A stretch of DNA of 64,000 nucleotides from Phyllobates terribilis (GCF_046119375.1 NW_027362761.1:736994001-737058000); one strand, 5' to 3'; positions 4,851-38,520 are shown, counted from the first letter of the stretch. Translations and numbers: made by a program. Notes: generated from the sequence alone by a model not told the origin.

Positions 4851-6341
4851 CATTAAAGATTTTTCTGTATTTTCATGACTATGAAAATTGTACATTCACA
4901 CTGAAGGCATCAAAACTATGAATTAACACATGTGGAAGTATATACTTAACAAAAAAGTGTGACACAACTGAAAATATGTCTTATATTCTAGGTTCTTCAA
5001 AGTAGCCACCTTTTGCTTTGATGACTGCTTTGCACACTCTTGGCATTCTCTTGATGAGCTTCAAGAGGTAGTCACCGGAAATAGTTTTCACTTCACAGGT
5101 GTGCCCTGTCAGGTTTAATAAGTGGGATTTCTTGCCTTATAAATGGAGTTGGGACCATCAGTTGTGTTGTGCAGAAGTCAGGTGGATACACAGCTGATAG
5201 TCCTACTGAATAGACTGTTAGAATTTGCATTATGGCAAGAAAAAAGCAGCTAAGTAAAGAAAAACGAGTGGCCATCATTACTTTAAGAAATGAAGGTCAG
5301 TCAGTCTGAAAAACTGGGCAAACTTTGAAAGTGTCCCCAAGTGCAGTTGCAAAAACCATTAAGCGCTACAAAGAAACTTGCTCAAATGAGGACCGCCCCA
5401 GGAAAGGAAGACCAAGAGTCACCTCTGCTTCTAAGGATAAGTTTATCCGAGTCACCAGTCTCAGAAATCGCAGGTTAACAGCAGCTCAGATTAGAGACCA
5501 GGTCAATGCCACACAGAGTTCTAACAGCAGACACATCTCTACAACAACTGTTAAGAGGAGACTTTGTGCAGCAGGCCTTCATGGTAAAATAGCTGCTAGG
5601 AAACCACTGCTAAGGACAGGCAACAAGCAGAATAAACTTGTTTGGGCTAAAGAACACAAGGAATGGACATTAGACCAGTGGAAATCTGTGTTTTGGTCTG
5701 ATGAGTCCAAATTTGAGATCTTTGGTTCCAACCACCGTGTCTTTGTGTGACGCAGAAAAGGTGAATGGATGGACTTGAACCATACTGAACCATCATGGCT
5801 ACCACAGCATCTTTCAGCGGCATGCTACTCCATCCGGTTTGCGTTTAGTTGGACCATCATTTATTTTTCAACTGGACAATGACCCCAAACACACCTCCAG
5901 GCTGTGCAAGGGCTATTTGACCAAGAAGGAGAGTGACGGGGTGCTACACCTGGCCTCCACAGTCACCAGACCTGAACCCAATCGAGATGGTTTGGGGTGA
6001 GCTGGACCGCAGAGTGAAGGCAAAAGGGCCAACAAGTGCTAAGCTTCTCTGGGAACTCCTTCAAGATTTTTGGAAGACCATTTCCGGTGACTGCCTCTTG
6101 AAGCTCATCAAGAGAATGCCAAGAGTGTGCAAAGCAGTCATCAAAGCAAAAGGTGGCTACTTTGAAGAACCTAGAATATAAGACATATTTTCAGTTGTTT
6201 CACACTTTTTTGTTAAGTATATAATTCCACATGTGTTAATTCATAGTTTTGATCCCTTCACTGTGAATGTACAATTTTCATAGTCATGAAAATACAGAAA
6301 AATCTATAAATGAGAAGGTGTGTCCAAACTTTTGGTCTGTA

Positions 6342-6344
<3 letters not shown>
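4851..6344 (+). mobile_element. Tc1/mariner DNA transposon with long (~230-bp) inverted repeats and a decayed transposase
   Basis: ATG at 5232 (MARKKQLSKEKR...), [15 protein letters not shown], ends GGYFEEPRI at 6181. 4851-5080 is inverted relative to ~6080-6310. Right end ...GGTCTGTACTG|TA. The outer ~35 bp of the left end and the KHGGG segment are deleted. Confidence 0.9.
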
Positions 6345-6388
<44 letters not shown>

Positions 6389-6390
6389 TA
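6345..6390. repeat. (TA)n microsatellite at the Tc1 TA target
   Basis: TA run directly after the TIR. Confidence 0.95.
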
Positions 6391-6555
6391 TACTTCAACT
6401 GAAGTTGTCTCATCTGACTGAGAGGCTCCTGCCAGTAATAGGAGTTTTTCTCAGATTTGGTATATGCTTTGCTTATCAGTTTTTTGTCAAATCATTAATA
6501 ATACTACATCATCTTTTAAAATAAATAACAATTTTAGTGATAGGTTCTCTTTAAA

Positions 6556-6886
6556 TTAAAAAAATGCAAGTTTAATATTGCCGTAAACATATTGACTAGG
6601 AGACCTAGGAGAATCATATTGCCAGGTAAGTTTTACTGCACCAAGAATGTAATCAAAACGAATAAAAAAGTGCGGAATTGTTTTTTTTATGGCAATTTTA
6701 CTGCAGTTGCAATTTTTTTCCCATTTTTCAGTACATTGTATGTTAAATTGAATGTTATAATTCAAAAGTATGACTTGTCCTGCAAAAAAGACCTCATATG
6801 GCAATGTCAGCGGAAAAATAAAAAAGTTATGGCTCTTGGAAGGCGAATAATAGACCAAAGCATAAAAGCAGAAAATCCCCTGTTCC
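6556..6886 (+). mobile_element. Probable right-end fragment of a non-autonomous piggyBac-like element
   Basis: Shares the AAAATAAAAAAGTT(A/C)TGGCTCT(T/G)GGAAG subterminal block with 23272-23537, which ends GGGG|TTAA. Confidence 0.45.
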
Positions 6887-7310
6887 TTAAAAGGGTTGTC
6901 CACTACCCCTTCTTAAAAACTATATTCCCCTTTGTATAACAAAACAAAAATAATTGATACTCAGCACCTGCATCGGTACCATTCCAGCAATGTCAGCGCT
7001 GGCTCTCTTGAGGCCGGTGTGACATTGTTATGCCATGTGACTACTGCAACCAATCAGCGGCTGCTATTGAACTGCTGTGCTCTGACTTTGGACAAACCTT
7101 GGACATTTGGGAGAGGTGTGAGTAATGCAGACCCCTAGCAGCCACTAATTGGCTGCACTGCTCACATGGCATAACATTGTCATGTGAGCCTAGGGAGACC
7201 TGGCGCAAACATTACTGGAAGGGCTCCGGTATGGGAGGTGTCTGCTTTATTTTATAAGGGGGACACAATATTTAAGAAGAAGTTATCCTATTAGTGGACA
7301 ACCAATTTAA
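6887..7310. mobile_element. TTAA-flanked MITE (T2/Kolobok-like)
   Basis: TTAA-AAGGGTTGTCCACTA ... TAGTGGACAACC-AATTTAA, with a partly palindromic interior. Confidence 0.7.
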
Positions 7311-7519
7311 GTAGATAATGGTCAGGTATGATCCGCAAAAGGGATGACATTAGGACATGATCCGAGTCTCACAGACCAGTAACCTGAATCCATTTTCAAA
7401 ACAGATGTGTGTGTATGGGTCAATGAAACTATTACTCTGTGCTCTTTCCAAGAAAACGGACAGTACTAGGACGTATCACAAGGATTTGTGAATGTAGCCT
7501 AAGTCCTCATTCAGACATA

Positions 7520-8512
7520 CCGTATTTTACAGACTATAAGACGCATCGGAACATAAAATGCACCCCAAATTTTGGGGTGGAATATAGAAAAGAAAATATT
7601 TTTATAAGATGGGGGTCCGTCTTATAATCTTAATAGGTACAGTATCTTACCTGGGGGGCGGTGGAGCGAGGGTTACAGGGTCCTTCAGGAATCCGGTGCT
7701 CCAGCAGCGGGGAGTTGTGGTTCAGCAGGATTGCAGGGCCCTCAGTTCCCTCCCTCAGGAACCTGGCAGTTGCAGCAGAAGAGATGGCTGGGGCCCAGTG
7801 CCTGGCTGGGGCCCTATGCCTGGCCAGGGACCAATGCCTGGCTGGAAGCCGGGGCCTGGCTGGGAACCGGGCTGGGGGCCTGGATGAGGCTCGGTGCATG
7901 GCTGGGGCCTGGGTGGGGATCGGGCCCTGTGCCTGGCTGAGGGCCGGGGCCGGTGTTTGGCTATCGGAGCCTGCCTGAGGGCCAGGACCGGTGGTGGTGG
8001 CGGCGGCAGCAGCAGCAAAGGAGAAGGAGGTGAGATGCTGCGGGTGTCTGGCTGGGGGCTGGCGTGGGTTGGACTGGATGCGGGCAGTGTCTGGCTGCGT
8101 GCCGGGGTCGGTGAGCGGCGCATGTTTCCGGTGTGCGTGGCCATCTTCCTGAAGCTGTGATCTACAGGAAAATGGCCGCTCAAGCTACAAGCCAGCGCAT
8201 GTGCTGGCTCGGGCGGCCATTTTCCTGTGGATCACAGCTTCAGGAAGATGGCCACGCACACCGGAAACCTGCGCCACTCACCGGCCCTGGACCGCAGCCG
8301 GACACCCACAGCATCTCACCTCCTCCTCCTTTGCTGCCGCCGATGCCACTGCCACAACCACCACTGCCGGGTTCTTGAAGGAGGGAGGCCCCGCGATCCT
8401 GCTCCACCACCACCGCAGGTACGCAACGTTTGGACCATAAGATCCGTTTGGACCCCCCATTTTCCTCCCAAATTTTGGGGAAAAAAGTGCGTCTTATGGT
8501 CCGAAATTACGG
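7520..8512. mobile_element. Non-autonomous Tc1/mariner-superfamily (Tc2-like) element with a GC-rich interior
   Basis: ~25-bp TIRs CCGTATTTTACAGACTATAAGACGCA / TGCGTCTTATGGTCCGAAATTACGG, TA on both flanks, and an internal 18-bp repeat at ~7790-7930. Confidence 0.8.
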
Positions 8513-8968
8513 TATGTGATTTTTCACATATGCAAAAATGGTCTGAGTTTTATTAGTGTTTTGTCAGTGTGTCAGTTTTTATCAGTTTCATCAGTGATTT
8601 TCACATATGGAAAGATAAATAAATTACAAAGATTCTCCTATACATTGAAAAGTTCATAACATACAGCACATGGACTGCACACTGATGCCATCTGTATGCT
8701 GTCAGTGATATTCACAGACCATAGACTTGTATGGGTAAAATTTGATCTACACAGAAACCTATGAGGCAAAGCCCCACTGAATAACTCCTCTCTGACAGGT
8801 CAATAAAATATAACTTTTATTATATTAATTTAAAAATTATATTAGAAGGTTTCCATTAAAATAAATTCATAATTGCCTATATATAATTGTAAGAAATCTT
8901 TTGGATAGTAATCTATTTCTCAAACTATGGCATAGCACCCCGGGGTACCATGCATGAATATATACCAT

Positions 8969-9019
8969 TGTCCAATCTCCTGATGATGTAGTTTCTGTTG
9001 TGAAACATGTAGGGGGACA
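8969..9019 (+). ncRNA. Minimal type-I hammerhead ribozyme-like motif with an intact core
   Basis: UGUCC-aau-CUC CUGAUGA [stem II] GAAAC AU GUA GGGGGACA. Stem III is the palindrome ACAUGU, stem I pairs UGUCC/GGACA and CUC/GGG. Stem II is imperfect. Confidence 0.65.
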
Positions 9020-9223
9020 TTTGCGATGTGTTTTAATTTTAATATTCATTATATTTGCTATACTCTTCATGAATAGTACCCCTGGGTGATATCCCATAGT
9101 TTGAGAGATTTAATAAATCTATTGGATAGTAATCTATCTCTCAAACTATGAAATAGCACCCTGGGGTACAATCCATGAATAGAATGGCAAATAGTGAATG
9201 TTAAAATTAAAACACATAGCACA

Positions 9224-9275
9224 TGTCCCCCCAACATGTTTCACTGCTGAAACGGCATAATCAGGGAATGGGACA
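9224..9275 (-). ncRNA. Mirror hammerhead-like motif (G8->U, probably inactive)
   Basis: Minus strand: UGUCCCAUUCC CUGAUUA UGCCGUUUCAGCAGU GAAAC AU GUU GGGGGGACA. Confidence 0.55.
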
Positions 9276-9884
9276 ATTGTGTATATTCTTGGTTGGTACT
9301 GTCCCATAGTTTGAGAGCTAGATTACTATCCAATAAATTAATTACAATTATATACAAGCAATTATGAATTTATTTAATGGGCACCTCCTAACATAATGTT
9401 TAAATTAATCTAATAAAAGTTATATTTTATTCACCTGTTAAGTGATGTGCCATTCAGTTGGGCTTTACCCCATAGGTTTTTGTATATATAAATGTATCCT
9501 TGCGGCCTGTTTTTTCTCCAATACTGTATACAAATAAATAACTAAAATTTGATCTATAACTCAAAAATGGACTTGTCTCCATTATTGTTTTTGCAGACAC
9601 ATTGATCGCATAAACAAGTACATGTGAATAGCACTATAGAATTTAATGGGAAGGTTTTCTAGATATGAAAATCACAGATGGAACACGTAAATGATTCAAT
9701 GACATCTAAATGAACCCCTATTCTGTTATAAAATCAGAAAACATCCTCATAGAATAAAACTCACCAGGATCAAACAAATTATGTATGCATTGACTGAAAT
9801 TATTAAGAGCGGGTCCAGAGGACGTAGCATCATGTCTGAACCCCTAATAATGAAAAACACTGTTTTTATCTTACAGAAAAGAAG

Positions 9885-10729
9885 ATGTGTGCAGCATTTA
9901 TGTTGATGATCTTTCTGTATATGGCTGTTAACACCAAAGGAGCCAGCCATCAGTGTAACAATATAGATGGTACTACACTTATTTGGTCAAATTTCAACAA
10001 TTGTTCAGATGTAATTTTAAAAAATAAAAGCATCAATGAAATTGTAATAAATGATCAAAGCTATTATGGTAGTGTCTCAAAACTGGATCTCTCCCACAAC
10101 AAAATTAAAGTTCTTCCTGGTGGATTTTTATCTAATGCTATTATATTGAAAGAAGTTCATCTACAAAACAATAATTTGGAAGATTTGCCAGAAAAATTTC
10201 TCAAAAACTCATCTAAGCTGCAAGTTCTTAACCTTGAAGGTAATCAACTGTCAACAATTCCTGCAAGTATTTTCCATGACACTCTTTATAACCTGACTGT
10301 AGACTGCCAGTGTAATTTGGTCAAGGACATAAACAATGCTTCAAAATACCCAAAACTTAATGCAATTTGCAAATTGTCTTCAGGGTGGACTAACCCACAG
10401 GATTTCTATGAAGAAAACTGTCGCAAACAATATATGGCCCTGTTCATTGTTTTACCAATATTGGTGATAGCTTTGATTGCTGGAGGAGTGGCTCTGTATA
10501 TGTGGAAGAGGAAGACAAGTTCATCAAGTCTAGAAAGCAAGAGTGCTGCAGACATGTCACCTGTTCATGGGCAACCACGCTACATGTCAACGAATATGGA
10601 AGGTAGTGCAACAATGGTAAATCCAGGCCAGAAACAAGATTATGAAAACGTTTTTGTTGGTTACTTGCCAACTACTGAAACAAAACCTTATGGCTATGGG
10701 AAAAATGAGCTTAAACCAGGCACTCACAG
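9885..10729 (+). CDS. LRRC25: LRRC25-like leucine-rich-repeat type-I membrane protein, first coding exon
   Basis: Signal peptide, three LRRs (LDLSHNKI, VHLQNNNL, LNLEGNQL), Cys-containing cap, TM segment ALFIVLPILVIALIAGGVALYMW, and cytoplasmic DYENVFVG like LRRC25 DYENMFVG. Acceptor TTTTATCTTACAG ends at 9876. Donor AG|GTAAGT at 10729/10730 (phase 2). Confidence 0.85.
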
Positions 10730-11632
10730 GTAAGTTTTGATTTAATCTCTGAGCCTTATGCTATTCCATAATATTACAGACTTCTTTTAACTATTTTTAT
10801 TAAGGTAACTTAATGGGTTGTCCCATCAGGCCATCTTTTTTCCATTCATTCTACTGAGGTACAACGTATTTAGAAATCACAGCAAGGGACCGCCAAAGAG
10901 AAAAGACTCTAAAAAGTGCCTCCCACACTGGAGAACTAAGTACAATCATGTATTGCAATGTATGAATCGCAGACTTTTTAAAAGGACACTATGTAATATG
11001 GTAATTAGGGCACACTCTGTCTCTGGTATCCTTGATGGTGGGTGTGATGAAGTTTCCGTCCACTGATGAGACATTTAATTGGCTTACTCCTGTAACAGTG
11101 CAATCATTAAAGGGTTAGTCCTGTATCACTCACTTCCACATCCAGAGATAAGTGATTTCATGTCTATTGATACCTGCAAGGATGTGTGCACACCTGGATA
11201 TATTGTGCACATGTCCCATTATAATAAACACATCATTAGAATTGGAAAATCAGGCTCATGTCCCGGCAGGTATCAGTAGACATACCTTAATCTGCTACAC
11301 TCACATCTCGATGCAAAGTGAGTGAGGCAGGACTATTCCCAACAAGGCACAGTACTTGTAAAATAAGGGCATACCAGCCACAAAATGCATTGGCTTAACA
11401 ATTTTAACATTACTGAAATGTCCAGTTAGCTAGATAGCTTCATATATGAACTGTATATGCATATAAATATGTATATACTAATCTATCCATCTAAAAAAGA
11501 AAAAGACAAAAGCAGCACCAGCAAAGTAGGGTGCAAAGCCTCCCAGGTACATACCAGTGCTCAAATATAGTAAAAAATTTGGAAGCAGCACACCATATTA
11601 TGCATAAAAAAGGGCTATTTAATAACCCATGA

Positions 11633-12069: not shown

Positions 12070-14565
<2,496 letters not shown>

Positions 14566-25650: not shown

Positions 25651-28600
25651 GTGTGGGGTTCCCCGTAATTTTAGTCTCTAGCGGAGGTTAAGCAGACGGC
25701 TGGGGCAGATGTTTGAAGCCTGGGAAGGGGGTAATACCCACGGAGCTTCCCAGGCTACTAATATCAGCCCCCAGCTGAATACCTAGCCTTTACTAGCTAT
25801 TAAAATGGGGGACCTCCCAAAAAATGACGTGGGGTCCCCCCTATTTTAATAGCTAGCAAAGGCTAGGCAGACAGCTGGGGGCTGATATTAATAGCCCAGG
25901 AAGGGTGCCATGAATATTGGCCCCCTCCCAGGCTAGAAACACTAGCCGTCAGCCGCCCCAGAAATGGCAGATCCATAGGATGTGCCAATTCTGGCACTTA
26001 GCCTCGCTCTTCCCACTGCCCTGTAGCGGTGGCAGTGGGGTAATAGGGTTGGGGTTGATGTCAGCTTATAATGCCAGCTGACATCAAGCCCAGGTTAGTA
26101 ATGGAGAGGCATCTATAAGACACCCCCATTACTAACCCCATAGTCAAAGTTAAAAAAAACACAAACACCCAGAATAAAGTCCTTTAATTGAAATAAAGAC
26201 ACATTCCTTTAATGTTCTAAATTAAACCCTACTTACCGTATCACCCATTCCAGCTGAAGCCAACGATCTCCTGCAATAAAAATAAAATAATAAACCAACC
26301 TCATCCTTACCTTTCCATGATTCCCAGGACAGCTTCAGCTCTGCTACATTGACATGACAGGCTGGAGCGCAGCAGAACGCTGCCATCCAGCTTGCCATGC
26401 CGCAGACATTGAGAAGCTCCTCAGTGAAGCTCCTCAGTGTCTGGCTGTGACGGCATCCAGATGAGCCGAGTTCATGTCCAATGAACTGAGCTCACCTCAT
26501 GCACGTCACTGACAGCGTGGGAGAATTCTCCTGCGCTCACCGCTTGAGCAGGAGACTCCTCCTCTTCTTCTAGGACAACCACCTCCTGCCGCACGCTATT
26601 CAAAGTCTTCTACAGCATGTAGATGACCGGAATAATGATGCTGATGATGGCATTGTCAGCGCTAACTAGTTTAGTAGCCATTTCAAAACTGTGCCGGACA
26701 CGCGCGCGGGACAGCGAGGGGCCGGAGAACACGCGCACCACCAAGATAAGAGAAGAAGACACTACGTTTGGAATAAGGGGAAGAGACAAAGAGCATTTAT
26801 CCAAATCTCAAAATAAATGAGAGATTAGGTAAAATGCGCTCAATCCCAACAGCATAACAGAATAACCTAGTGGGGCATCCATACAATAGAGTTCACCATA
26901 AAATCTCATACATAGGTCCCTTATATTCCCAGGGGATCACTCAAAAGGTATATAAACCAGATACATTAGTACAGTTCAACGTGAGTCAATTTCCCTCCAA
27001 GGGAAAGAAAAGGACAATGAGGAAGTCTTGAAAGATGCTCCATCTTGTCAGCTGTAGAGTGTCTTGAACATCAAATTAAAGGAGGTCCATAAAGAGGGTG
27101 CACAATGACAATTAGTTAGTAGCCCAACATCTAAAAGAGTGAAGAAAAGCACAAAATTAAAAACAAAAGTAAAAACGAGCTAAAAACTGAAGCACGGACT
27201 GAAAGATCAGAGAAAGAGTAACACTGAGGGAGAGCACCACAAGACAAAAAGGCCATATCATAAAAATGAGGAGAAACCCAAATTTTCATTAAGACCACGC
27301 GGTACCAGGGTATCCAGGACGCTAATCCATCCGGCTTCCTTTTGCGCAAGGCAAAGTTTATAGTCACCGCCCCGAGAGCCCAGATGCACCACATCAATGC
27401 CACGCACCATCAGGCTGCGTGGGTCACAACCATGAACTTTTTTAAAATGTCGTGGTAGTGTTCTAAGCTCCCGGGGGTCCGACACAGATTTGGCTGCGCC
27501 AATGTCCCGCACATGCTCCCGCACCCGAATCCTTAGTTCCCTCGTAGTAAGTCCTACGTAGATTTTCTGGCAACTGCACGTGGCATAATAAACCACGTGT
27601 GTTATACTACAGGAGATGTATTTCGAAATTTGGTAGGTGCTGGAGCCATCCGAAGTCGTAAAGGATGAGCAGCGAAGGACATTGGCGCAAGCCAAGCAGT
27701 GGCCACATGGATAGGATCCAACCCTGGGCCGGCGTGACCCAAAAGGGTTAGGTGCTGGTGGGATGTAGTGACTAGACGTAACCAGATCGCCCAAAATTTT
27801 GGCTCATCTGGCAGTCATGAGTGGAAATTGTCCCACCACGTCCCTAAGGGAGGGCTCCGCGCCAAGAACATTCCAATGTCGCGAGATGACCCGCCTCATA
27901 GTTTCCCACTCATGGTTATAGGTGGAAATGAAGCGGGTCCTCTCAGGGAACCCAGAAGGGGGTCTCCGAGAGGGGTAAAGGAGATGACTGCGGGGGGTGC
28001 TGCGGGCTCTACCGTAGCCACGGCCAATGCATCGATTGCTGTAACCTCTCTGTTTGCAACGTTCCGTCAGGTCCGCCGCCTGCTTCTCAAATTTAGCATC
28101 CGTAGAACAGATGCGCTTAATCCTAAGGAACTGTCCGACCGGGACGGCCCTAATTGTTGAAGAAGTATGTCCAGAGGCAGCATGCACCAACGAGTTCACA
28201 GCCGTGGGCTTCCTGTAGATGTCAGTCTGGATGGAGGAGTGTGAGTCCACCTCCAGAGTGACGTCCAGGAAGTCCATACGTGTGAGGCTGTGAATATACG
28301 TGAGTTTAATCCCCCACTCATTGGCATTTAGCTGTCTCATGAAGTCGTCAAGCTCCTCCACAGAACCCCGCCAAAAGAATAAGACATCATCGATATACCT
28401 GAGCCATGTCACAACCTGGCTGGCACAACATCGCCCCCAAAAATTTCCCTCTCCCACGCACCGAGGAAGAGGTTTGCATACGAAGGCGCACAGGCCGCAC
28501 CCATGGCTGTGCCACGTCGCTGCAGGTATACCGTGTCTTTGAAAAGAAAATATTTATGGCAAATGATAAAGCGGAGGAGCTCGAGGATAAATTCACGTGA

Positions 28601-29378
28601 AGGGCCGTCCAGGTCGGAGGTCCCAAGGAAAAGACGAGCAGACGCTAGGCCAAGGTCATGACCAATGCAGGTATACAGACTCTCGACATCGGCCGTGACA
28701 ATGATAGTGCCCGGTTCCAAGGAGACGCCATCAACCCTAGTAAGGACGTCCGTCGTGTCCTTGACAGAGGATGGAAGGGTCTCTACAAGTGGTCTCAAGA
28801 GACTATCAACATATTGAGAGATTGGACCACAGAGACCCCCAAACCTGACACGATCGGACGTCCTGGAGGGCTGGTGGCGTCCTTGTGTACCTTAGGAAGT
28901 AGATAAAAGGTAGCTGCTTTGGGGGAACGTGCAGTCAGAGCCTCCACAGTCCTCTTATCTATAATACCCCTCTCGCAGGCCCGAGCCAGGATTCCCTGTA
29001 GGGTAGCGGAGAAGGAGGTCGTGGGATTGTACGGCAGCCTAGAGTAAGTGTCCTTATCTCTCAGCTGTCGCAATGCCTCCCTCTCATATTTATAGTGGGG
29101 CCACAGGACGATGTTTCCTCCCTGGTCTGTTGGTTTAATAACCATGTCCTTAAGTTTTTTGAGTTAACCAGGGATTGAAGCTTGAAGAGGACAATTTGCA
29201 TATTCCAGGTGCCTTCTGGGAAAAGCGAAGAGTCTCCTTCAGCTAGAAGATCGTTGGGTACAGCCGGGACCAGCTGCTTGGAAAGCATCGCCAAACCGCC
29301 AAAATTTGTTTAATTTGTTTGTCCTAGGGTATCACAAGAAAGAAGACAGACATCAAGTCAGCAGGGACAAGGAGCAGC

Positions 29379-30337
29379 ATGGCAGATGTGACAACCTACA
29401 TGGTGAGCTGCAACATGTGCTACATGTTCACAGATCGACCAGAAGCTGAAACCAACTTCACCTGCCAGAAGTGTAGACTACTGGCTCTTTTAGAAGAAAA
29501 GGTGCGGGGACTGGAAGAAAGAATTGCGACATTAAAACTCATCAAGGAAAATGAAGACTTCCTGGACAGAACAGAAGCGTCACTACTGGTCACGGAAAGT
29601 CAAGGAAGCATCAGAGAACCTCCAGAGGCAGACAAGTGGAGGCAAGTGACCAAAAGAAGCAAGAAGACCATGGAGACACCACCAACCACACAACTGAGAA
29701 ACAGATTCCAAGGACTAGTGGAGGACGAAGATGGCACACCTAAGGATGAGGAACTACCAGCAAGCAAAAAAGGAAAGAGCACCCAGAAACACCCAGAAGC
29801 GACAAGAAAAAGGACAGCCAAGAAGGGAAGAAGAGTGGTGGTGGTGGGAGACTCACTACTGAGAGGAACAGAAGCAGCTATCTGCAGACCGGACATAACC
29901 GCAAGAGAAGTATGCTGCCTCCCAGGGGCAAAGATCAAGGATGTTACCGATAGGATACCGAAGCTCATCAGTTCCAAGGATGTCCACCCATTTCTTCTGA
30001 TACATGTTGGCACCAATGACACGGCAAAGAAGGACCTACCGACAATCTGCAAGGACTTTGAAGCATTGGGGAAGAAAGTAAAAGAACTGGATGCGCAGGT
30101 AGTTTTTTCTTCTATCCTTCCAGTAGACGGGCATGGCGTCAGGAGATGGAACAGGATCCTTGAGGTGAACAACTGGCTGAGACGATAGTGCAGACAACAA
30201 GGATTTGGATTCCTGGACCACGGTGTGAATTACCTCTATGACGGACTCCTTGCCAGAGACGGACTACACCTCAACAAACCCGGGAAACACACATTCGCCA
30301 GGAGACTCGCAACACTCATCAGGAGGGCGTTAAACTA
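29379..30337 (+). pseudogene. CR1 ORF1 (Cys zinc finger, coiled coil, SGNH esterase) with one premature TAG at 30186-30188
   Basis: CNMC...CQKC, GDSLLRG, HVGTND. Reading through the TAG gives CRQQGFGFLDH...RDGLHLN...RRALN*. Confidence 0.9.
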
Positions 30338-30349
30338 GAAGAAGAGGGG

Positions 30350-33281
30350 ATGGGAAGAAAAACGCCGGACACGATCATGCAACCAGAGAACATACTAATG
30401 AAAGATATGAAGTGCGACAAAGAAGGTCCAAGACAAGATACTTGGAAGGGAGGTAAGAAAATTTCTAATACAATCCACAGGGAGAAGATTGGAACAAAAC
30501 AAAATCGTGTAAACTGCGTGCTAGCAAATGCCAGGAGCCTGACAAACAAGATGGATGAACTGGAAGCAGAAATATCTACAGGTAACTATGACATAGTGGG
30601 AATAACCGAGACATGGTTAGATGAAAGCTATGACTGGGCAGTTAACTTACAGGGTTACAGTCTGTTTAGAAGGGATCGAAGAAGTCGGAAAGGGGGTGGA
30701 GTCTGTCTATATGTAAAGACGTGTCTAAAGCCTACAATACGGGAGGATGTATGGGAGGGAAATGAGGAGGTCGAGTCCTTATGGGTGGAGATACATGGGG
30801 CAAAAAACAATAATAAAATTATCATAGGAGTCTGTTATAAACCACCAAATATAGCAGAAACCACGGAAAGTCTATTAATGAGACAAATAGACGAAGTAGC
30901 AAAAAATAATGGGGGACTTCAACTACCCCGATATAGACTGGGAAACCGAAAGCTGTAGATCTCAGAAAGGAAACAGGTTTCTGTCAATTATCAAAGACAA
31001 TTATTTGTCACAACTTGTGCAGGAACCAACTAGAGGGACGGCCCTTTTAGACTTAATATTAACTAACAGGCCAGACAGAATAACTGAGGTGCAGGTCGGG
31101 GGGCACCTGGGAAATAGTGACCACAACATTATACAATTCCACATGTGCTTCAGTAGGGTGCCCAGCAAGGGAGTCACAAAAACACTGAACTTTAGGAGGG
31201 CAAAGTTTGATCAGCTAAGAGATGCCCTTCACCTTATAGACTGGGATAGTATCTTTAGTAATAGGAGCACGGATAGAAAATGGGACATTTTCAAAACAGT
31301 CCTACATAGTCACTGTAGAAGGTACATACCTTATGGGAATAAAAGGGCTAGGAATAGGAGGAAGCCAATGTGGCTAAATAAGGAAGTCAAGAGGGCAATG
31401 AAAAACAAAAAAAGGGCTTTCGGTAAACTTAAACAAGAAGGCAGCGAGGAAGCGCTAATATCTTATAGGGAAAAAAACAAAATCTGTAAGAAACAAATAA
31501 GAATAGCAAAAGAGGAGACAGAGAGACTAATTGCCAAGGAAAGTAAAACGAATCCCAAACTGTTCTTTAACTATATAAACAGTAAAAGGATTAAAACTGA
31601 TGGAGTTGGCCCATTGAAAAATAACCTGGGTAAAATCATAGAGGGCGATGAGGGTAAAGCAAACCTACTCAATAGCTTCTTCTCCACTGTTTTCACAAAA
31701 GAAAACAATTTATCGGAGGAAATGCAGAGTGATAAAGTAAATGCTCCGCTAAATATCACCCACCTAACCCAGGGGGAAGTTCAGAAACGCCTAAATAATA
31801 TCAAAATAGACAAGTCACCAGGCCCAGATGACATACACCCCCGGGTACTAAAAGAATTAAGTAATGTGATAGACAGGCCGCTGTATCTTATATTCAAGCA
31901 CTCTTTATGGACAGGGACTGTCCCACTAGACTGGCGCCAAGCAAATGTGGTACCAATATTCAAAAAGGGGTCTAAAAGTGACCCTGGGAACTATAGACCA
32001 GTCAGCTTAACGTCTGTTGTGGGTAAATTGTTTGAAGGATTTCTTAGAGATGCTATTGTAGAATATCTTAATGATAATAACTGTCTAACTCCATATCAAC
32101 ATGGATTCATGAGGGATCGCTCCTGCCAAACAAACCTGATCGCCTTCTACGAGGAGGTGAGCTCACAGCTGGACTGCGGAGAGTCAGTGGATGTTGTATA
32201 CCTTGACTTCTCCAAAGCGTTTGATACCGTGCCACACAAAAGGTTGGTATATAAAATGAGAATGCTTGGTCTGGGGGATAATGTGTGCAAGTGGGTAAAT
32301 AGCTGGCTGAGTGATAGAAAGCAGAGGGTGGTTATCAATGGAGTAAGCTCAGGGGGTGTCAGGGTTACTAGCGGGGTGCCTCAAGGGTCTGTCTTGGGCC
32401 CTATATTATTTAATATATTTATTAATGATCTAGTGGAAGGGTTGCATAGTAAAATAGCAATATTTGCAGATGATACTAAACTTTGTAAAGTAGTTAATAC
32501 AGATGAGGACAGGGCACAGCTACAGGAGGATTTAGATAAATTGGGGAGTTGGGCCAAAAAATGGCAAATGGGGTTCAATGCCGATAAATGTAAGGTCATG
32601 CACATGGGAAAGAAAAACAGCAGTCACCCATACATATTAAATGGGAAACCGTTGGGGAAATCTGACATGGAGAAGGACCTGGGCGTCTTGGTTAACAGCA
32701 AATTAAATTGGAGTGCCCAGTGTCAGGCAGCAGCTGCGAAGGCAAATAGAGTCATGGCATGCATCAGAAGAGGAATAGGGGCATATGATGAGAACATTGT
32801 TCTTCCTCTGTATAAAGCGCTGGTAAGGCCGCACTTAGAATATTGTGCACAGTTCTGGGCTCCGGTGCTCAGGAAAGACATATTGGAGCTAGAGAGGGTA
32901 CAAAGGAGGGCAACTAAGGTAATAAAGGGAATGGAGGGACTAGAATACCCAGAGAGGTTGTCAAAATTAGGCCTATTTACATTGGAAAAGAGAAGGCTTA
33001 GGGGAGACCTCATAAACATGTATAAATACATCAGGGGGCAGTACAGAGATCTCTCCCATGACCTGTTTATACCAAGGATAGTGACAAAGACGAGGGGGCA
33101 CACTATGCGTCTGGAGGAAAGGAGGTTCCTGCACCAGCATAGAAGGGGATTCTTTACGGTCAGAGCCGTGAGACTCTGGAACTCTCTGGGAGAGGAAGTG
33201 GTGATGTCCAACTCACTTAATGAGTTCAAGAGAGGCCTGGACGCCTTTCTTGAGAACAATAAAATTACATCTTATGCTTAG
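30350..33281 (+). pseudogene. CR1 ORF2 (APE endonuclease + RT) with one frameshift near 30909
   Basis: ANARSL, GITETW, GDFNYP, SDHN, YLDFSKAFD, GVPQGSVLGP, FADDTK; 790 aa open after the frameshift. Confidence 0.93.
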
Positions 33282-34693
33282 TTAATTAATCCAGGGATTT
33301 AATCTTACTGCCAGATTGGTGTCGGGAAGTGAATTTTTCCTCAGTGATGTAAATTGGCCTATACCTCATGGTTTTTTTGTTGCCTTCCCCTGGATCAACG
33401 CTGCGGAATAGCTGCAGTGCACAAGAAATAGGCTGAACTGGATGAACGCTTGTCTTTTTTCGGCCTTATAAACTATGTAAATATGTAACTATGTAACTAT
33501 GAGTTGTTGAATCGCTTGACGTTGGGCGGAGGTTAAATTGTCAATCTTTCTCCGTGTGGAGAGTTTTATAAAATCCTCCGCCACTAAGTTGACAAAAATT
33601 TCCACTGCCGGACAAATAGACAAGGGAGGGAACCTCGTTGATTTGGGGTTCCTAATCTGTGGTAACCCACCTGTGGGAGGAGTCGTTTGTTTCAAAAAGA
33701 GGTCCTCCAGATGTTGTAGGGCCTCCTCCTCCGCCACCACCGGGTCATGATCACCATCCGACCTGAAATGGAGTTTTTTTAGAATCAGTTTCCGAGCAAA
33801 CAGATGGAGGTCCTTAAGGGCCGTGAAATAGTCAAAAGAATTTGTAGGGGAAAATGACAGGCCAATACTAAGGACCTCCATCTGTGTCTCAGTCAAAACA
33901 TGATTGGTTAAGTTCATAACACGGAGCCCCCCCCGGGGATCACCAACCTGGTATGGGGTTGTCCGCTTCCTCCTATTGTTCGGTCTCGTTTGGATACGTT
34001 CAGTTAGTTGAGTAAAGGAGCCACCCTGGGAGTCCACGCTAGTAACTGGTATCTGATTCTCACTAGAGGTTCCAGAGGCATTTGAAGTGGACCTGGACCG
34101 TACATGTGAGTTGTTGCGAGACCTAGGCCTTCGATTTTCAACTGGTGATCGCCACCGATACACTCTATGGGTGAACTTATCCTGTGTATCGCGTTGAAAT
34201 TTTTTTATTTTCATTGTTTGGATTTCTTTAACAAGTTTCTGACAATCCACGTCAACCTCCTCATTAAGTTTCTTAAGGTCATCACTAGATAGATCCTTCC
34301 TAAGTTGTCCTTGTAGGAGATCAATCTCTAATTCTAACTCCCGAAGAGATTTTTCATTCTGCTCTTTGAGGAGACCCAAAAAGCGCAGAGAGCAGGTGTT
34401 AGCCAGAGATTCCCAGTTATTTTTAAATGACTCATCTTCAATTTTAAAAGAAGGAAAGATCAGTATACTCAGGCCTCTGGGGATCAGAGCTTTCTCAATA
34501 TATTTGGTTAGAAAGGCATGGCTCCACCAGGTTCGACATCTCCGTTTAATTAAGACCTTGAAACTGGTAAAGCTCTCCCTCAGTCTCTGATCTGTGTCCA
34601 GCACCACCAAACTCCCATTGCTAGATAAGTCATCTAACTGCGCGAGCCAAGTGGTGTCTCGTGCACGAAAATCCATTATGGGCCAGGCAAGAA

Positions 34694-35269
34694 CTGTAAA
34701 AATACAGAGAAACATATATGTAAGAAGAAAACTGGCCAAATGCATAATATAAGACGAACCATGGTGCTAAGACAATTTGTCAAGCACCAGGTTCGTATTG
34801 CCTACTCATTAGTAACATGCAAAAAAAGGGGAGAACACAAGAGCAACATGGCAAAGAGACAAAATCTTTATTAATAATAAATTACCAAAGTGATAAAAGT
34901 TATACAAAAATGACAAGGCAAGGGGATAAGGAGAGAAGGTGCCAGAGACAAGGCATTTCCTGGAAATCAAACGCTGGGCAGTCCAAACCTTATGGGTACA
35001 TGTAGGTATAGAGACAATGGAGTAAGACATGGATATATAACCAAATAGATCCGAGGGTATGGACAGTCCATCAGTAAAGAGACCACCCCACTATGAGACA
35101 GAAAACAGCTCGGCAAACATAAGAATAAATATCATGTGCAAATTGCAAACAGTAAATGGTAGCCGAGATAAGATTCAAGTCTGAAAATTAGGTATATACA
35201 TATCTTACACCATATTTATATGGGTTGCAGTGTCCAACAAGTACCCAGAGTATGGTTTAAATTACTCAC
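34694..35269 (-). other. Putative spliceosomal intron in the Penelope 5' leader
   Basis: Donor GG|GTGAGTAA at 35269 and acceptor TTTTTACAG ending at 34694, 17 nt before the ATG at 34676. Confidence 0.55.
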
Positions 35270-35345
35270 CCAGCCAAAATAAACACAGGTGAGGGAGAGC
35301 CCGCGGATGCCAGGAAAGCCCCAGAAAGTGCTGCCAGTAAGGAAT

Positions 35346-35386
35346 GCGCCCCGACGCGTGTTTCGCCTATCTTTATCAAGAGGCGC
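35346..35386 (-). ncRNA. Minimal type-I hammerhead ribozyme with the U3-A8 covariant core in the Penelope leader
   Basis: GCGCCUC UUGAUAA A G-AUAGG-C GAAAC ACGC GUC GGGGCGC: 7-bp stem I, 1-bp stem II, short stem III, GUC cleavage triplet. Confidence 0.75.
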
Positions 35387-37028
35387 TGCATAGTGCACCT
35401 AAAAGGACCTGATTATATACGCCCCCATCCAGTCACATGATTCAGTGAGAGAGGGGGACTCATTGGTGTATAGCGGCGCGTGTGCCCGGAACCACGCCCC
35501 CCCGCTGCACGCGTCACAGCCGTCAGGTCCCGACACGCGCCCGGGGGTGCGCCCAGGAAACGCCCCCAGAGGCGTGCCAGGGACGGAGAGACAGCCGGAC
35601 ACGCGCGCGGGACAGCGAGAGGCCGGAGAACACGCGCACCACCAAGATAAGAGAAGAAGACACTACGTTTGGAATTCTAACTAGTTTAGTAGCCATTTCA
35701 AAACTGTGCAGAAGGGTACAGAGGTCCTTAATATGGTCCCATTCCATAAACGTGATATGCCCCACGTCCGTACTGCATTGGATTAGGCTATACGACATGA
35801 CATACTGTGTCAGGGCTCGTGCCATAGTTGCTGCAACATGTGCAGAGTGGAATTCCACTGCGTCGGCAACATTGCATATCAACCTGTTAACTGACATAGA
35901 CAAAGACCTCTGTATTGATGCAAATCGATGACATGAGGCATGCGAACGGCGGAAGTGAGCACACAGCTTCCGTACTTTCTGAAGCAGTTCATCCAGGCCG
36001 GGATAGTGGTGAAGAAATCACTGTACCACCAGGTTGAGGACGTGAGCCATGCAAGGCACGTGTGTGAGTTTGCCTCGGCGTAGGACCGCCAACAGGTTCA
36101 CACCGTTATCGCACACGGCCTTTCCTGGCTCCAGGTTCAGCGGAGACTGCCATTGCTGAAACTGAGCCTGGAGAGCCATCCACAACTCTTCAGCTGTATG
36201 ACTGCGATCTCCAAGGGATATTAAATTGAAGACTGCCTAATTGCGGTGAGCACTGGCTGCGCAGTACGGAGGTGGTGTTGATTCGCTCAGCACTGTTGAA
36301 TGCGTGTCTCGTTAAGGCAGAGGTTGATTGCGCAGGTGGAGGCCCTAGAGGAGGTGGAGGATGCAGAAGCAGTGGAGGAAGTGTGAAATACAGAGGTTTC
36401 TTCTGCAAGCCTTGGGGATTCCAAGATTTGTGGAGCAGCCCCTTCCCAGACTGTCCCCACAGCCACCAGAGTCACCCAGTGCCCAGAAAGCGAGATGTGA
36501 CGCCCTTGGCCATGCTTACTCGTCCAGGTGTCTGTGGTTAAATGCACCTTGGCAGATATAGATTTAGTCAAGGAACGGGTGATGTTGTCTGTGACATGCT
36601 GGTGTAGCGCAGGCACAACTTTCTTAGAGAAGTAATGGCGACTGGGCAACTGGTACTGGGGGACTGTGATGACCATCAACTTTCGGAAACAGTCTGTATC
36701 TACCGTCTGAAAGGCAGCATTTCCGTGGCCAACTGATTTGAGATGGTGGAATTCAATTTCTTAGCTTTGTCATGTGCAGGATGAAACAATCTTTTACGTG
36801 ACCACAACTGCGGGACCGAGGGCTGGCTGCGGTGCTGAGAGAGGGCGGAGTACCAAGCTTATTCCTCCTTCCACCACAACCTCTCTTTTTCCCACTCATG
36901 TTGCTCAGATACTGCAGTAGGAGCACGCTATTAGCAAGACAAAATTACATATTTTCCTCTGCAACAGTTCTGCACACCTGAATTTCAGTGGCACTAAATG
37001 ACAAGGTAAGATATGTCTTCCTGTATAA

Positions 37029-37521
37029 TCACAAGCAAGAATAGAAGGAAAGGCAGCACTCACCCAGTCTTCTTTAAAACGTTCCTTTATTTTTGTGTGC
37101 GGAGCATTTCAGCGTGCAGCTTTGGACTGAGACCCCGAAGGGTATGCGGGGGAGAGGAAAAAAGGGACAACGGCCGTTTCGCTGCCTTCCGGCGCTTCAA
37201 TGGGACCCGTTGACTTTGGACCCGTTGAAGCGCCGGAAGGCAGCGAAACGGCCGTTGTCCCTTTTTTCCTCTCCCCCGCATACCCTTCGGGGTCTCAGTC
37301 CAATGCTGCACGCTGAAATGCTCCGCACACAAAAATAAAGGAACTTTTTAAAGAAGACTGGGTGAGTGCTGCCTTTCCTTCTATTCTTGCTTGTGATTGA
37401 AATATTTCTTGGATGTGCACCACCGTTTAAGTCTTGAAGCACACAGTCTGAATTATGCCCTGGTGATTGATCCTCTGAAAAAAACAGCGTGGTGCCAGAA
37501 TGTTTCTCTTGCATTTGAACT
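37029..37521. mobile_element. Palindromic Penelope pLTR-derived mini-insertion
   Basis: 174-bp arms 37027-37200 and 37225-37398 with about 2 mismatches. 19-bp duplication GATATGTCTTCCTGTATAA at 37010-37028 and 37522-37540. AATAAA at 37334 and GGTGAGT at 37361. Confidence 0.8.
37218..37260 (+). ncRNA. Hammerhead-like motif at the palindrome centre (core mutated)
   Basis: GGAC CCGUUGA AG C-GCC-GGAA-GGC-AG C GAAAC GGCC GUU GUCC. Stem III is the palindrome ACGGCCGU. Core differs from CUGAUGA at two positions. Confidence 0.5.
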
Positions 37522-37552
37522 GATATGTCTTCCTGTATAACATTACTAACCG

Positions 37553-38520
37553 AACAAAGTATTTTTTTTTACTGTGGATGACGCCTATATAACATAGGAG
37601 ATCTTCTCCAAACTATTTCAACCTGAGACGTTCCTGCTGTATAGTGCTAAGAACAGAACAAATATTTTTTTTTACTGGGGATGACGCCTGTATAACATAG
37701 GAGATATACTCCAAACCATTTCAAACTGAGATGCTCCTGCTGTATAGTGTTAGGAACCAAAGTATTTTTTTACTGTGGATGACGCCGGTATAACATAGGA
37801 GATTTTCTCCAAACTATTTCAAACTGAGATGTCCCTGCTGTATAACTTTAGGAACCGAACAAAGTATTTTTTTTACTGGGGGGTGACGCCTGTATAACAT
37901 AGGAGATATTCTCGAAACTATTTCAAACTGAGATGTCCCTGCTGTATAATGTTAGGAACTGAACAAAGTATTTTTTTTAATGTGGATGGTGCCAATATAA
38001 CATAGGAGATATTCTCGAAACTATTTCAAAATCAGATCTAGCCTGCTGTATAACGTTAGCAACAGCACAAAATAGATTTTTTGACTCTGCACAAGCTCTG
38101 AATACAGCTGAATTTCACCGCCACTAAAAGGACTAGGTGGCTTATAGCAGAGTGTAACACGTTTGTGACAGAAAAAAATATTTTTTGGACTCTTGTCTAG
38201 CAACAGAAAAAAATATTTTCCTTTACTTTGAAAACAGCTGATGTTCACCACCACTAACGTAGTAGCTGACGTATAGCAGAGTGTATGACATTTGCCACAG
38301 AAAAAAATCGTTTGTGGACCCTGCCTAGCAAGACAAAAAATCTATTTTTTTACTTTGAAAACAGCTTAGGTTCACTGCCACTAAAATAGTAGGTGGATTT
38401 TAGCAGACTGTATCACGTTTGCCACAAAAAAAAATCTTTGGTGGACTGTGGCTAGCAATAGAAAAAATCTATTTTTTTTTACTTTGAAAACAGCTGAATT
38501 TCACCCACCCAAAAAATGAC
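37553..38520. repeat. Tandem arrays upstream of the hAT A transposase: ~102 bp x5, then ~128 bp x3-4
   Basis: AACAAAGTATTTTT recurs at ~37553, 37657, 37757, 37858 and 37962. ACTTTGAAAACAG recurs at ~38225, 38352 and 38481. Confidence 0.85.

What the first reader, a model, noticed from the sequence alone, without database searches (positions are those of the whole stretch)
8736..9556. TSD-flanked 735-bp nested palindrome with two mirror hammerhead ribozymes, ~330 bp before the LRRC25 ATG
The ORF-less insert is arm/arm' plus a short tail, between 14-bp duplications. Each arm has a hammerhead-like motif inside its own ~50-bp inverted repeat. The + copy keeps CUGAUGA, GAAAC, palindromic stem III ACAUGU and a GUA site. 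Minimal type-I hammerheads with palindromic stem III are established in Penelope-like elements and retrozymes and are thought to act as dimers. A non-autonomous hairpin family with the ribozyme in a stem loop may be undescribed. The + copy is sense to LRRC25 and probably intronic, because a splice acceptor precedes the ATG exon, so pre-mRNA self-cleavage is conceivable.
Basis: partly seen in the sequence, partly recalled or inferred. Interest (0 to 1): 0.8.

Follow-up and report, generated by a model that had tools for sequence, protein, structure and literature searches.

The report
Old palindromic retro-insert with decayed hammerhead motif
Upstream of the first coding exon of the golden poison frog's LRRC25 gene sits an old, fixed, non-coding palindromic retroelement insertion of the Penelope-like kind whose arms carry a worn-out hammerhead-ribozyme-like motif that is very unlikely to cut RNA today, so it is an ordinary piece of frog junk DNA rather than a new ribozyme system.

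Summary
The structure is real. There is an exact 14-bp target duplication (8736-8749 and 9543-9556), a 743-bp imperfect palindrome with a second inverted repeat inside each arm, and a one-sided 50-bp tail. The host is Phyllobates terribilis, and the ATG at 9885 is the annotated LRRC25 start.

The + strand motif (8976-9015) fits the published "minimal hammerhead" descriptor of Penelope-like elements (PLEs). It is the only such hit in the 64 kb, against 0.02 expected by chance.

It is a poor ribozyme:
- Helix II has one Watson-Crick pair in five.
- G10.1-C11.1 is G·U in both arms.
- The hammerhead fold costs +5.5 kcal/mol, against -10.6 for a competing hairpin kept in both arms.
- The mirror copy has the core change G8 to U.
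- The motif is no better conserved between the arms than its surroundings.
- One transcript holds only one sense copy, so no dimer can form within one transcript, and that copy is buried in a roughly 370-bp hairpin.

TSD, inverted body and one-sided tail are the published PLE insertion signature. Unverified notes of this scan report many such palindromes in this genome. Here, however, the motifs point towards the axis, not away from it.

RNA contigs start at the acceptor (9875) and omit most of the element. That fits an intronic position but shows no cleavage. Family copies and orthologous loci could not be retrieved.

Verdict: an ordinary member of a known kind, of low interest.

The parts
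8736..8749 (.). left copy of the 14-bp target-site duplication TAAAATTTGATCTA
   Evidence: exact direct repeat, (D6)
8750..9109 (+). left arm of the palindrome. Segments: a 8750-8889, b 8890-8960, c 8961-9055, b' 9056-9109.
8915..9109 (.). nested inverted repeat of the left arm (8915-8958 / 9066-9109, 86%) with a 107-nt loop that holds the + motif
   Evidence: I7. The fold of the 5' half shows this hairpin.
8976..9015 (+). hammerhead-like motif, + copy. Helix I 8976-8979 / 9012-9015; CUGAUGA 8980-8986; unpaired U 8987; helix II 8988-9001; GAAA 9002-9005; palindrome ACAUGU 9005-9010; predicted cleavage after A9011.
9110..9135 (.). 26-nt spacer at the palindrome axis. It is the start of segment b of the right arm and has no mirror in the left arm.
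   Evidence: (I4)
9136..9492 (-). right arm of the palindrome, the reverse complement of the left arm
9229..9268 (-). mirror hammerhead-like motif with a broken core. It reads CUGAUUA at 9264-9258, where + strand A9259 is U8. GAAAC is 9242-9238 and the GUU site ends at 9233.
9493..9542 (+). one-sided non-palindromic 50-bp tail. It contains AATAAA at 9533-9538 and ends in an (AAAT)-like run.
   Evidence: The tail as a PLE insertion feature is described in PMC8557442.
9543..9556 (.). right copy of the target-site duplication
   Evidence: D6
9875..10733 (+). LRRC25 first coding exon. The acceptor AG is at 9875-9876, the ATG at 9885, and the ORF runs to the stop at 10733. The annotated protein splices on to a last exon near 10728.
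   Evidence: (RNA contigs 9875-10695)

Best explanation
This is an old, fixed, non-coding retroelement insertion made by target-primed reverse transcription, most likely by Penelope-like element (PLE) machinery.

Its parts are a 14-bp target duplication, two inverted copies of about 360 bp of the same sequence, and a 50-bp tail at one end only. Each arm carries a relic of the PLE/retrozyme-type minimal type-I hammerhead. The relic was already weak when the two arms formed and is now inactive.

The insert lies about 320 bp upstream of the acceptor of the first coding exon of Phyllobates terribilis LRRC25. That is probably inside the 5'-UTR intron. If it is transcribed, it would fold into a long imperfect hairpin and be removed with the intron.

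Shown here: the structure, the TSD, the match to the motif descriptor, the poor hammerhead energetics, fixation in three individuals, use of the acceptor, and the absence of most of the element from RNA contigs.

Inferred: the PLE agency, the hammerhead ancestry of the motif, and the intronic position.
For: - Exact 14-bp TSD, palindrome and tail.
- 14 bp is longer than the target duplications I know for DNA transposon superfamilies (own knowledge). It fits retro-insertion.
- PLE insertions are described as 5'-truncated, often with an adjacent inverted truncated copy that forms inverted repeats, and with a tail at one end only (PMC8557442).
- An insert with the same layout lies 28 kb away in this window. 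It has a 19-bp TSD, 181-nt arms at 98% and a 123-bp one-sided tail.
- The motif at 8976-9015 is the only hit of a minimal-hammerhead descriptor in 128 kb of both strands. Shuffles give 0.02 hits per window, and 0 of 200 at the observed helix lengths.
- The motif also shows features that the 2014 authors did not put into their descriptor and that recurred among their hits: an unpaired base between A9 and 10.1, and a palindromic helix III (PMC4209133).
- Frogs carry thousands of such motifs; about 9,000 were found in Xenopus tropicalis.
- Inactivity: the hammerhead fold costs +5.5 kcal/mol against an MFE of -10.6. A competing GUUUC/GAAAC hairpin is present in both arms. The mirror copy has U8. 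In the whole insert, 34 of 40 motif bases pair with the other arm.
- RNA contigs start at 9875, and RNA depth is 0 over 8943-9139.
Against: - The two motifs point towards the palindrome axis. A palindrome made during target-primed reverse transcription should have its sense strands pointing away from the axis. Other PLE palindromes noted in this genome are described that way (unverified notes).
- Therefore either the palindrome was already present in the RNA template, or the motif is antisense to the template.
- There is no sequence similarity to the PLE in this window.
- Helix II is far from the 6-8 bp reported for PLE minimal hammerheads. G10.1-C11.1 is G·U in both arms, so the common ancestor of the two arms was already a weak hammerhead.
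- The motif is no better conserved between the arms (about 78%) than the rest (84% by substitutions).
- The left-arm segment that holds the + motif is close to single copy at 80% likeness in two DNA runs.
Confidence: 0.5

Rival explanations
1. The hammerhead match is chance. The element is a palindromic non-autonomous repeat mobilised by a LINE or PLE reverse transcriptase, and it has no ribozyme ancestry. GAAAC is simply one half of a small GTTTC...GAAAC hairpin, and ACATGT is a short palindrome in palindrome-rich DNA.
For: - Helix II has only 1 Watson-Crick pair in 5, and the hammerhead fold is unfavourable.
- The GUUUC/GAAAC hairpin is kept in both arms.
- The motif is not specially conserved between the arms.
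- The orientation is opposite to what a PLE-made palindrome predicts.
- No Rfam hit.
- At 0.02 chance hits per window, a scan of hundreds of windows of this genome expects several chance hits under the relaxed descriptor.
Against: - At the observed helix lengths, none of 200 shuffled windows gave a hit.
- The motif sits inside exactly the kind of insertion (TSD, inverted repeat, tail) that carries hammerheads in PLE-rich genomes.
- It has the unpaired base after A9 and a palindromic helix III, which were not required of the core boxes.
Confidence: 0.33
2. One reading: a family of hairpin-shaped non-autonomous elements carries a working, dimer-dependent hammerhead in a stem loop, and the sense copy can cleave LRRC25 pre-mRNA.
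For: - The + copy has intact core boxes and a GUA site.
- During transcription the left arm's own hairpin can form first and leave the motif in a 107-nt loop.
- The element is sense to LRRC25 and upstream of a used acceptor.
Against: - Only one sense copy exists per transcript, so a dimer would need two pre-mRNAs.
- A monomeric helix III would be 2 bp with a 2-nt loop, which cannot form.
- Helix II is nearly all wobble pairs. Even inside the loop, the predicted fold pairs both core boxes away.
- PLE minimal hammerheads cleave poorly in vitro even when well formed (PMC4209133).
- No RNA ends or reads were seen over the motif. Contigs cannot show RNA ends, so this point is weak.
Confidence: 0.05
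3. It is a DNA transposon of the MITE or foldback kind with long terminal inverted repeats, and the 14-bp repeat and the tail are incidental.
For: - Long inverted arms and no coding capacity.
- The insert may sit inside another hairpin repeat (flank inverted repeat 8578-8613 / 9656-9691, I9).
Against: - A 14-bp exact duplication lies precisely at the insert's ends. Chance expectation in 1.4 kb is well below 0.05 (my estimate).
- 14 bp is longer than the duplications of known DNA transposon superfamilies (own knowledge).
- A 50-bp unpaired tail lies inside the duplication on one side only.
Confidence: 0.07

Closest known systems
Minimal type-I hammerhead motifs of metazoan Penelope-like elements (Cervera & de la Pena 2014, PMC4209133)
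   Same: - CUGAUGA and GAAA boxes.
- An unpaired base between A9 and 10.1.
- A short helix I (4 bp).
- Helix III reduced to a palindrome (ACAUGU) that could only pair between two copies.
- A GUA site.
- Occurrence as a pair on opposite strands about 250 bp apart. The paper reports such pairs 100-700 bp apart.
- A host group (frogs) rich in these motifs.
   Different: - Helix II is 5 pairs with only 1-2 Watson-Crick pairs, instead of 6-8 bp.
- G10.1-C11.1 is G·U.
- The mirror copy has U8.
- No link to a PLE reverse-transcriptase-bearing element could be shown.
- No family or covariation data.
Complex inverted insertions of Penelope-like elements (Craig et al. 2021, PMC8557442)
   Same: - A target duplication.
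- Two inverted copies of one sequence meeting at an axis with unequal truncation (26-nt spacer).
- An extension ('tail') at one end only.
- No coding sequence left.
- The insert at 37010-37540 in the same window has the same layout.
   Different: - If the motif marks the sense strand, the copies are joined tail-to-tail. The described form is head-to-head.
- The arms are only 79-84% alike, so the insert is old or the palindrome was already in the template.
- Each arm has a further internal inverted repeat.
- The tail is 50 bp, against the 30-40 bp described.
Animal non-LTR retrozymes (Cervera & de la Pena 2020, PMC7229834; Li et al. 2026 preprint, 10.64898/2026.07.22.740005)
   Same: - Small non-coding, non-autonomous elements with type-I hammerheads that need dimers.
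- Related to PLE pLTRs.
- Present in amphibians.
   Different: - Retrozymes are head-to-tail tandem repeats with all ribozymes in one orientation. They yield circular RNAs.
- This element is an inverted, not direct, arrangement, and there is no evidence of circles.

Membership tests
Hammerhead ribozyme, PLE-type minimal motif | Core boxes C3-U4-G5-A6-N7-G8-A9 and G12-A13-A14 | tested here: inconclusive
   The + copy is intact (8980-8986, 9002-9004). The mirror copy has U8 with C3 unchanged, so it fails.
Hammerhead ribozyme, PLE-type minimal motif | A15.1-U16.1 pair, a non-G base at position 17, and palindromic 15.2-16.2/loop 3 | tested here: met
   ACAUGU followed by A in the + copy and by U in the mirror copy.
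Hammerhead ribozyme, PLE-type minimal motif | Unpaired nucleotide between A9 and 10.1 | tested here: met
   U8987. The mirror copy has the same.
Hammerhead ribozyme, PLE-type minimal motif | Conserved G10.1-C11.1 pair and a long, stable helix II (6-8 bp) | tested here: not met
   10.1-11.1 is G·U in both arms. Helix II has 5 pairs. The + copy has 1 Watson-Crick pair. The mirror copy has 2 Watson-Crick pairs and a mismatch. The hammerhead fold scores +5.5 and -2.8 kcal/mol, against MFEs of -10.6 and -13.5.
Hammerhead ribozyme, PLE-type minimal motif | Helix I of 4-5 bp directly adjoining the core and the cleavage site | tested here: met
   UCUC/GGGG, 4 pairs of which 2 are G·U.
Hammerhead ribozyme, PLE-type minimal motif | Consensus family in the genome with covariation in the helices | not testable with these tools
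   - No other copy lies in the window.
- The genome itself cannot be searched here.
- Laying DNA contigs at 80% likeness gave patchy extra depth and near single-copy depth over the + motif.
Hammerhead ribozyme, PLE-type minimal motif | Self-cleavage at the predicted site | not testable with these tools
   This needs an in vitro transcription assay or RNA-end mapping.
Rfam hammerhead families | Match to a hammerhead covariance model | tested here: not met
   No hammerhead hit at E <= 10 over 8000-10500, and none at gathering score in the window. The models also miss the PLE-type motifs near 35346 and 37240, so the test is insensitive for this class.
Penelope-like element insertion | Target duplication, adjacent inverted truncated copies, and a tail at one end only | tested here: met
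   14-bp TSD, arms 8750-9109 and 9136-9492, tail 9493-9542. Description of the signature in PMC8557442.
Penelope-like element insertion | Sense strands (and hammerheads) pointing away from the axis, 3' ends outward | tested here: not met
   The + motif is in the left arm and the - motif in the right arm, so they point towards the axis.
Penelope-like element insertion | Sequence similarity to the pLTR or 3' end of an element that encodes RT and GIY-YIG endonuclease | tested here: inconclusive
   No similarity to the PLE at 26662-35709 or to the palindrome at 37010-37540. Other PLE families of the genome could not be searched.
Non-LTR retrozyme | Head-to-tail tandem units, each with a hammerhead in the same orientation | tested here: not met
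   The two units are inverted. The only direct repeats (spacing 210-221) are the stems of the nested hairpins.
DNA transposon (MITE / foldback) | Short fixed-length TSD directly abutting both terminal inverted repeats | tested here: not met
   The TSD is 14 bp, and a 50-bp unpaired tail separates the right arm from it.

The most novel reading that the evidence does not exclude
The insert is a retro-copy of a rod-shaped RNA that carries a hammerhead in both polarities, laid out like viroids and delta-like circles. In that layout the plus ribozyme lies opposite the complement of the minus ribozyme in the rod.

On this reading the palindrome was in the RNA template, not made at integration. The element would then belong to an undescribed family of hairpin or ambisense-hammerhead non-autonomous retroelements in frogs.

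What would fit this reading:
- the motifs point towards the axis;
- the duplication is intact while the arms have diverged;
- the tail could be a terminal loop.
Probability: 0.04. Interest if true: 0.75.

Novelty: new member of a known kind. Interest (0 to 1): 0.22.

Why it matters
It matters little for biology at large. It adds one more example of how Penelope-like retroelements litter frog genomes with palindromic, hammerhead-bearing fragments, here next to an immune gene (LRRC25) in a giant dendrobatid genome.

Two points are useful for the scan:
- Rfam hammerhead models do not see this class of minimal motif, so a negative Rfam result should not be used to dismiss them.
- A match to the sequence boxes is not a ribozyme. 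Helix II, the fold energy and the orientation relative to the insertion must be checked.

Only if the inward-pointing, template-encoded hairpin reading proved to be a family trait would this become an interesting new kind of ribozyme-bearing element.

Tried and rejected
- Rfam scan of 8000-10500 at E <= 10, and of the whole window at gathering score. No hammerhead was found. A control scan of 34800-37700 also misses the PLE-type motifs there, so the negative result is uninformative.
- BLAST of the element against the window. It matches only itself. There is no similarity to the PLE at 26662-35709 or to the palindrome at 37010-37540.
- BLAST of the joined flanks against the window, to find an empty-site paralog. 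None was found.
- Orthologous LRRC25 loci of other dendrobatids through the look-up of encoding contigs. Three isoforms were not on record. For Ranitomeya variabilis and Anomaloglossus the gene is on record, but no DNA is served because the files are too large.
- Two metagenome pattern scans, one with the motif and one with the conserved block of segment b. Both gave 0 hits.
- The search of earlier findings by sequence.
- The supplement of PMC4209133 and Lunse et al. 2017 are not held, so no published frog motif sequences could be compared.
- Laying contigs of two DNA and two RNA-like runs at 80% likeness. This showed fixation and use of the acceptor. It gave only patchy depth, with no table rows for the element, so it yielded neither a copy number nor a variation profile of the motif.
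- Reading the four copies of segment b for a hierarchy of ages. All are about equally diverged, so no order of events could be inferred.

Full report
**What is there**

The sequence shows an exact 14-nt direct repeat, TAAAATTTGATCTA, at 8736-8749 and 9543-9556. It encloses 793 bp.

Of these, 8750-9492 form an imperfect palindrome. BLAST of the stretch against the window finds its own reverse complement at 79% over 767 columns. A global alignment of the arms gives 300 matches, 57 mismatches (26 transitions, 31 transversions) and 29 gap columns.

The axis lies in a 26-nt spacer (9110-9135). The last 50 bp (9493-9542) have no mirror and form a one-sided tail that contains AATAAA.

Each arm holds a further inverted repeat: 8915-8958/9066-9109 and 9111-9160/9295-9344. 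The layout is therefore a-b-c-b' | b-c'-b'-a'-tail. The four b copies are about equally diverged from one another.

As a single strand, the insert folds into one long hairpin of -370.6 kcal/mol, with z = -24. No other copy lies in the window.

**Host and gene**

The ORF at 9885-10733 is 100% identical over 281 residues, from the first Met, to NCBI's LRRC25 isoform X2 of Phyllobates terribilis. It carries LRR domains.

I laid contigs of two DNA runs from other samples and two RNA-like runs on 5200-11100.
- DNA contigs reproduce 8666-9245 and 9219-9642 (one individual) and 8803-8992 and 9055-9245 (another) without a single difference. The insert is real and fixed in the individuals sampled.
- RNA-like contigs cover 9875-10695 and then continue for 14 and 140 letters that do not lie on the adjoining DNA. 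The AG at 9875-9876 is therefore a used acceptor, and a 5' exon exists elsewhere.
- RNA depth is 0 over 8943-9139 and close to 0 over 8746-8942 and 9337-9533.

This fits an intronic or upstream position. Exon 1 was not located, so 'intronic' remains an inference. Contigs cannot show RNA ends, so nothing can be said about cleavage.

**The hammerhead motif**

The + copy reads UCUC-CUGAUGA-U-GUAGUUUCUGUUGU-GAAAC-AUGU-A-GGGG (8976-9015).

I wrote a descriptor after the published minimal hammerhead of Penelope-like elements. It required:
- the core boxes, including the U3-A8 variant;
- an optional unpaired base after A9;
- helix II of at least 3 pairs;
- a self-complementary helix III ending in U followed by a non-G base;
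- helix I of at least 3 pairs.

This motif is the only hit on either strand of the 64 kb. Dinucleotide shuffles give 0.02 hits per window. At the observed helix lengths, 0 of 200 shuffles gave a hit. The match is therefore more than a trivial coincidence.

It also has two features that Cervera and de la Pena list as emerging from real motifs without being demanded: an unpaired base between A9 and 10.1, and a palindromic helix III (PMC4209133).

The absence of any Rfam hammerhead hit does not count against it. The same models also fail on the other PLE-type motifs in this window.

**Why it is not a working ribozyme, and why 'two ribozymes' is wrong**

- The mirror copy (9229-9268, - strand) reads CUGAUUA. 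G8 is replaced by U while C3 is kept, so the C3-G8 pair is lost. The known tolerated alternative is the U3-A8 covariation.
- In the + copy, helix II is G·U, U·G, A-U, G·U, U·G. In the mirror copy it is G·U, C-G, C/A, G-C, U·G. The 10.1-11.1 pair, which the authors describe as highly conserved G-C, is G·U in both arms. Even the common ancestor of the two arms therefore had a weak helix II, far from the 6-8 bp reported.
- The hammerhead secondary structure scores +5.5 kcal/mol for the + copy, against an MFE of -10.6. For the mirror copy it scores -2.8, against -13.5. The MFE folds use a GUUUC/GAAAC hairpin, present in both arms, that buries the GAAA box.
- The motif is no better conserved between the arms (9 differences in 40) than the arms overall.
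- Helix III as a monomer would be 2 bp closing a 2-nt loop, which cannot form. A dimer needs two sense copies, and a transcript of either strand has one sense and one antisense copy.
- In the full insert, 34 of the 40 motif bases pair with the other arm. Even in the nascent 5' half, where the left arm's own hairpin leaves the motif in a 107-nt loop, both core boxes are paired away.

**What made it**

A 14-bp duplication is too long for the DNA transposon superfamilies I know (own knowledge), and the unpaired tail inside the duplication does not fit them either.

The combination of a target duplication, two inverted copies of one sequence meeting at an axis with unequal truncation, and an extension at one end only is how PLE insertions are described (PMC8557442). 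[quoted passage not shown]

The window holds a second insert of the same layout at 37010-37540. It has a 19-bp duplication, 181-nt arms at 98%, a 10-nt spacer and a 123-bp tail on one side. Unverified first-reader notes of this scan list many palindromes with hammerhead motifs elsewhere in this genome. The scan has therefore met this kind of object before, on other DNA of the same genome.

Cervera and de la Pena also reported paired minimal hammerheads on opposite strands 100-700 bp apart. The 'undescribed hairpin family' claim is therefore not supported as it stands.

**What does not fit**

In a palindrome made during target-primed reverse transcription, the 3' ends face outward. The sense strands, and their hammerheads, should then point away from the axis, which is how the other notes describe theirs ('back-to-back'). 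Here the motifs point towards the axis.

Either the palindrome was already in the RNA template, for example a read-through transcript of a complex inverted PLE array copied as S + reverse-complement(S) + tail, or the motif is antisense to the template and therefore meaningless.

Other observations:
- The duplication is perfect while the arms differ by 16% in substitutions. That mildly favours a template-encoded palindrome. I estimate the chance of 28 unchanged bases at 8% decay per copy at about 0.1.
- The excess of transversions between the arms is also odd for decay in place.
- At 80% likeness, depth over the element is patchy. Against a single-copy depth of about 12 in run X2, the bins read 189 (8746-8942), 17 (8943-9139, which holds the + motif), 683 (9140-9336, which holds the mirror motif, and also 46 in both RNA-like runs) and 68 (9337-9533).

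Related sequences therefore exist, but I could not see them. The asymmetry between the arms is unexplained.

**Weighing**

| Reading | Probability |
|---|---|
| Old PLE-type retro-insertion carrying a decayed relic of a real minimal hammerhead | about 0.5 |
| The same kind of insertion with a chance motif | about 0.33 |
| DNA transposon | about 0.07 |
| Active ribozyme acting on LRRC25 pre-mRNA | about 0.05 |
| Retro-copy of a rod-shaped ambisense-hammerhead RNA | about 0.04 |

Under all the likelier readings, the object is an ordinary member of a known class with no demonstrated effect on LRRC25.

**Limits**

No family alignment, no orthologous locus and no raw RNA reads could be obtained. 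Ancestry of the motif, the age of the insert and the position of exon 1 therefore rest on inference.

Noticed in passing
window 37010-37540: An insert with a 19-bp exact target duplication (GATATGTCTTCCTGTATAA), a palindrome with 181-nt arms at 98% and a 10-nt spacer, and a 123-bp tail on the right side only. It has the same layout as the finding but is much younger. It has no sequence similarity to the finding or to the PLE at 26662-35709.
   Followed up: partly
window 9140-9336: Both RNA-like runs show depth of about 46 in this bin, although the mirror-image bin 8943-9139 has 0. The DNA runs show about 50 times single-copy depth here. DNA contigs of two individuals break at 9219-9245. The cause is either expressed paralogs that resemble the right arm, or part of a transcript from this locus.
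   Followed up: no
The eight bases between UUGAUAA and GAAAC (AGAUAGGC) cannot form a helix II. Rfam does not see it either.
   Followed up: partly
window 8116-8274 (- strand): A GC-rich hairpin of about 160 nt gives a sub-threshold Rfam match to a plant miRNA family (MIR1144, 43 bits against a 90-bit gathering score). It lies in a repeated GC-rich block (7600-8450) with thousands-fold depth in the DNA runs. It is probably another palindromic repeat, not a miRNA.
   Followed up: no
window 8578-8613 and 9656-9691; 8533-8567 and 9562-9596: The DNA flanking the insert has its own inverted repeat (78%) and direct repeat (71%), and both flanks are repeated in the genome (depth 660-7,900). The insert may have landed inside another hairpin-type repeat.
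   Followed up: no
window 5200-6380, 12640-13617, 13933-14559: Tc1/mariner transposase remnants (5933-6181, 13933-14559) and a Ty3/gypsy-type integrase ORF (12640-13617). The block at 5200-6380 reaches summed word depths in the millions in the DNA runs, so it is an extremely abundant family in this genome.
   Followed up: no
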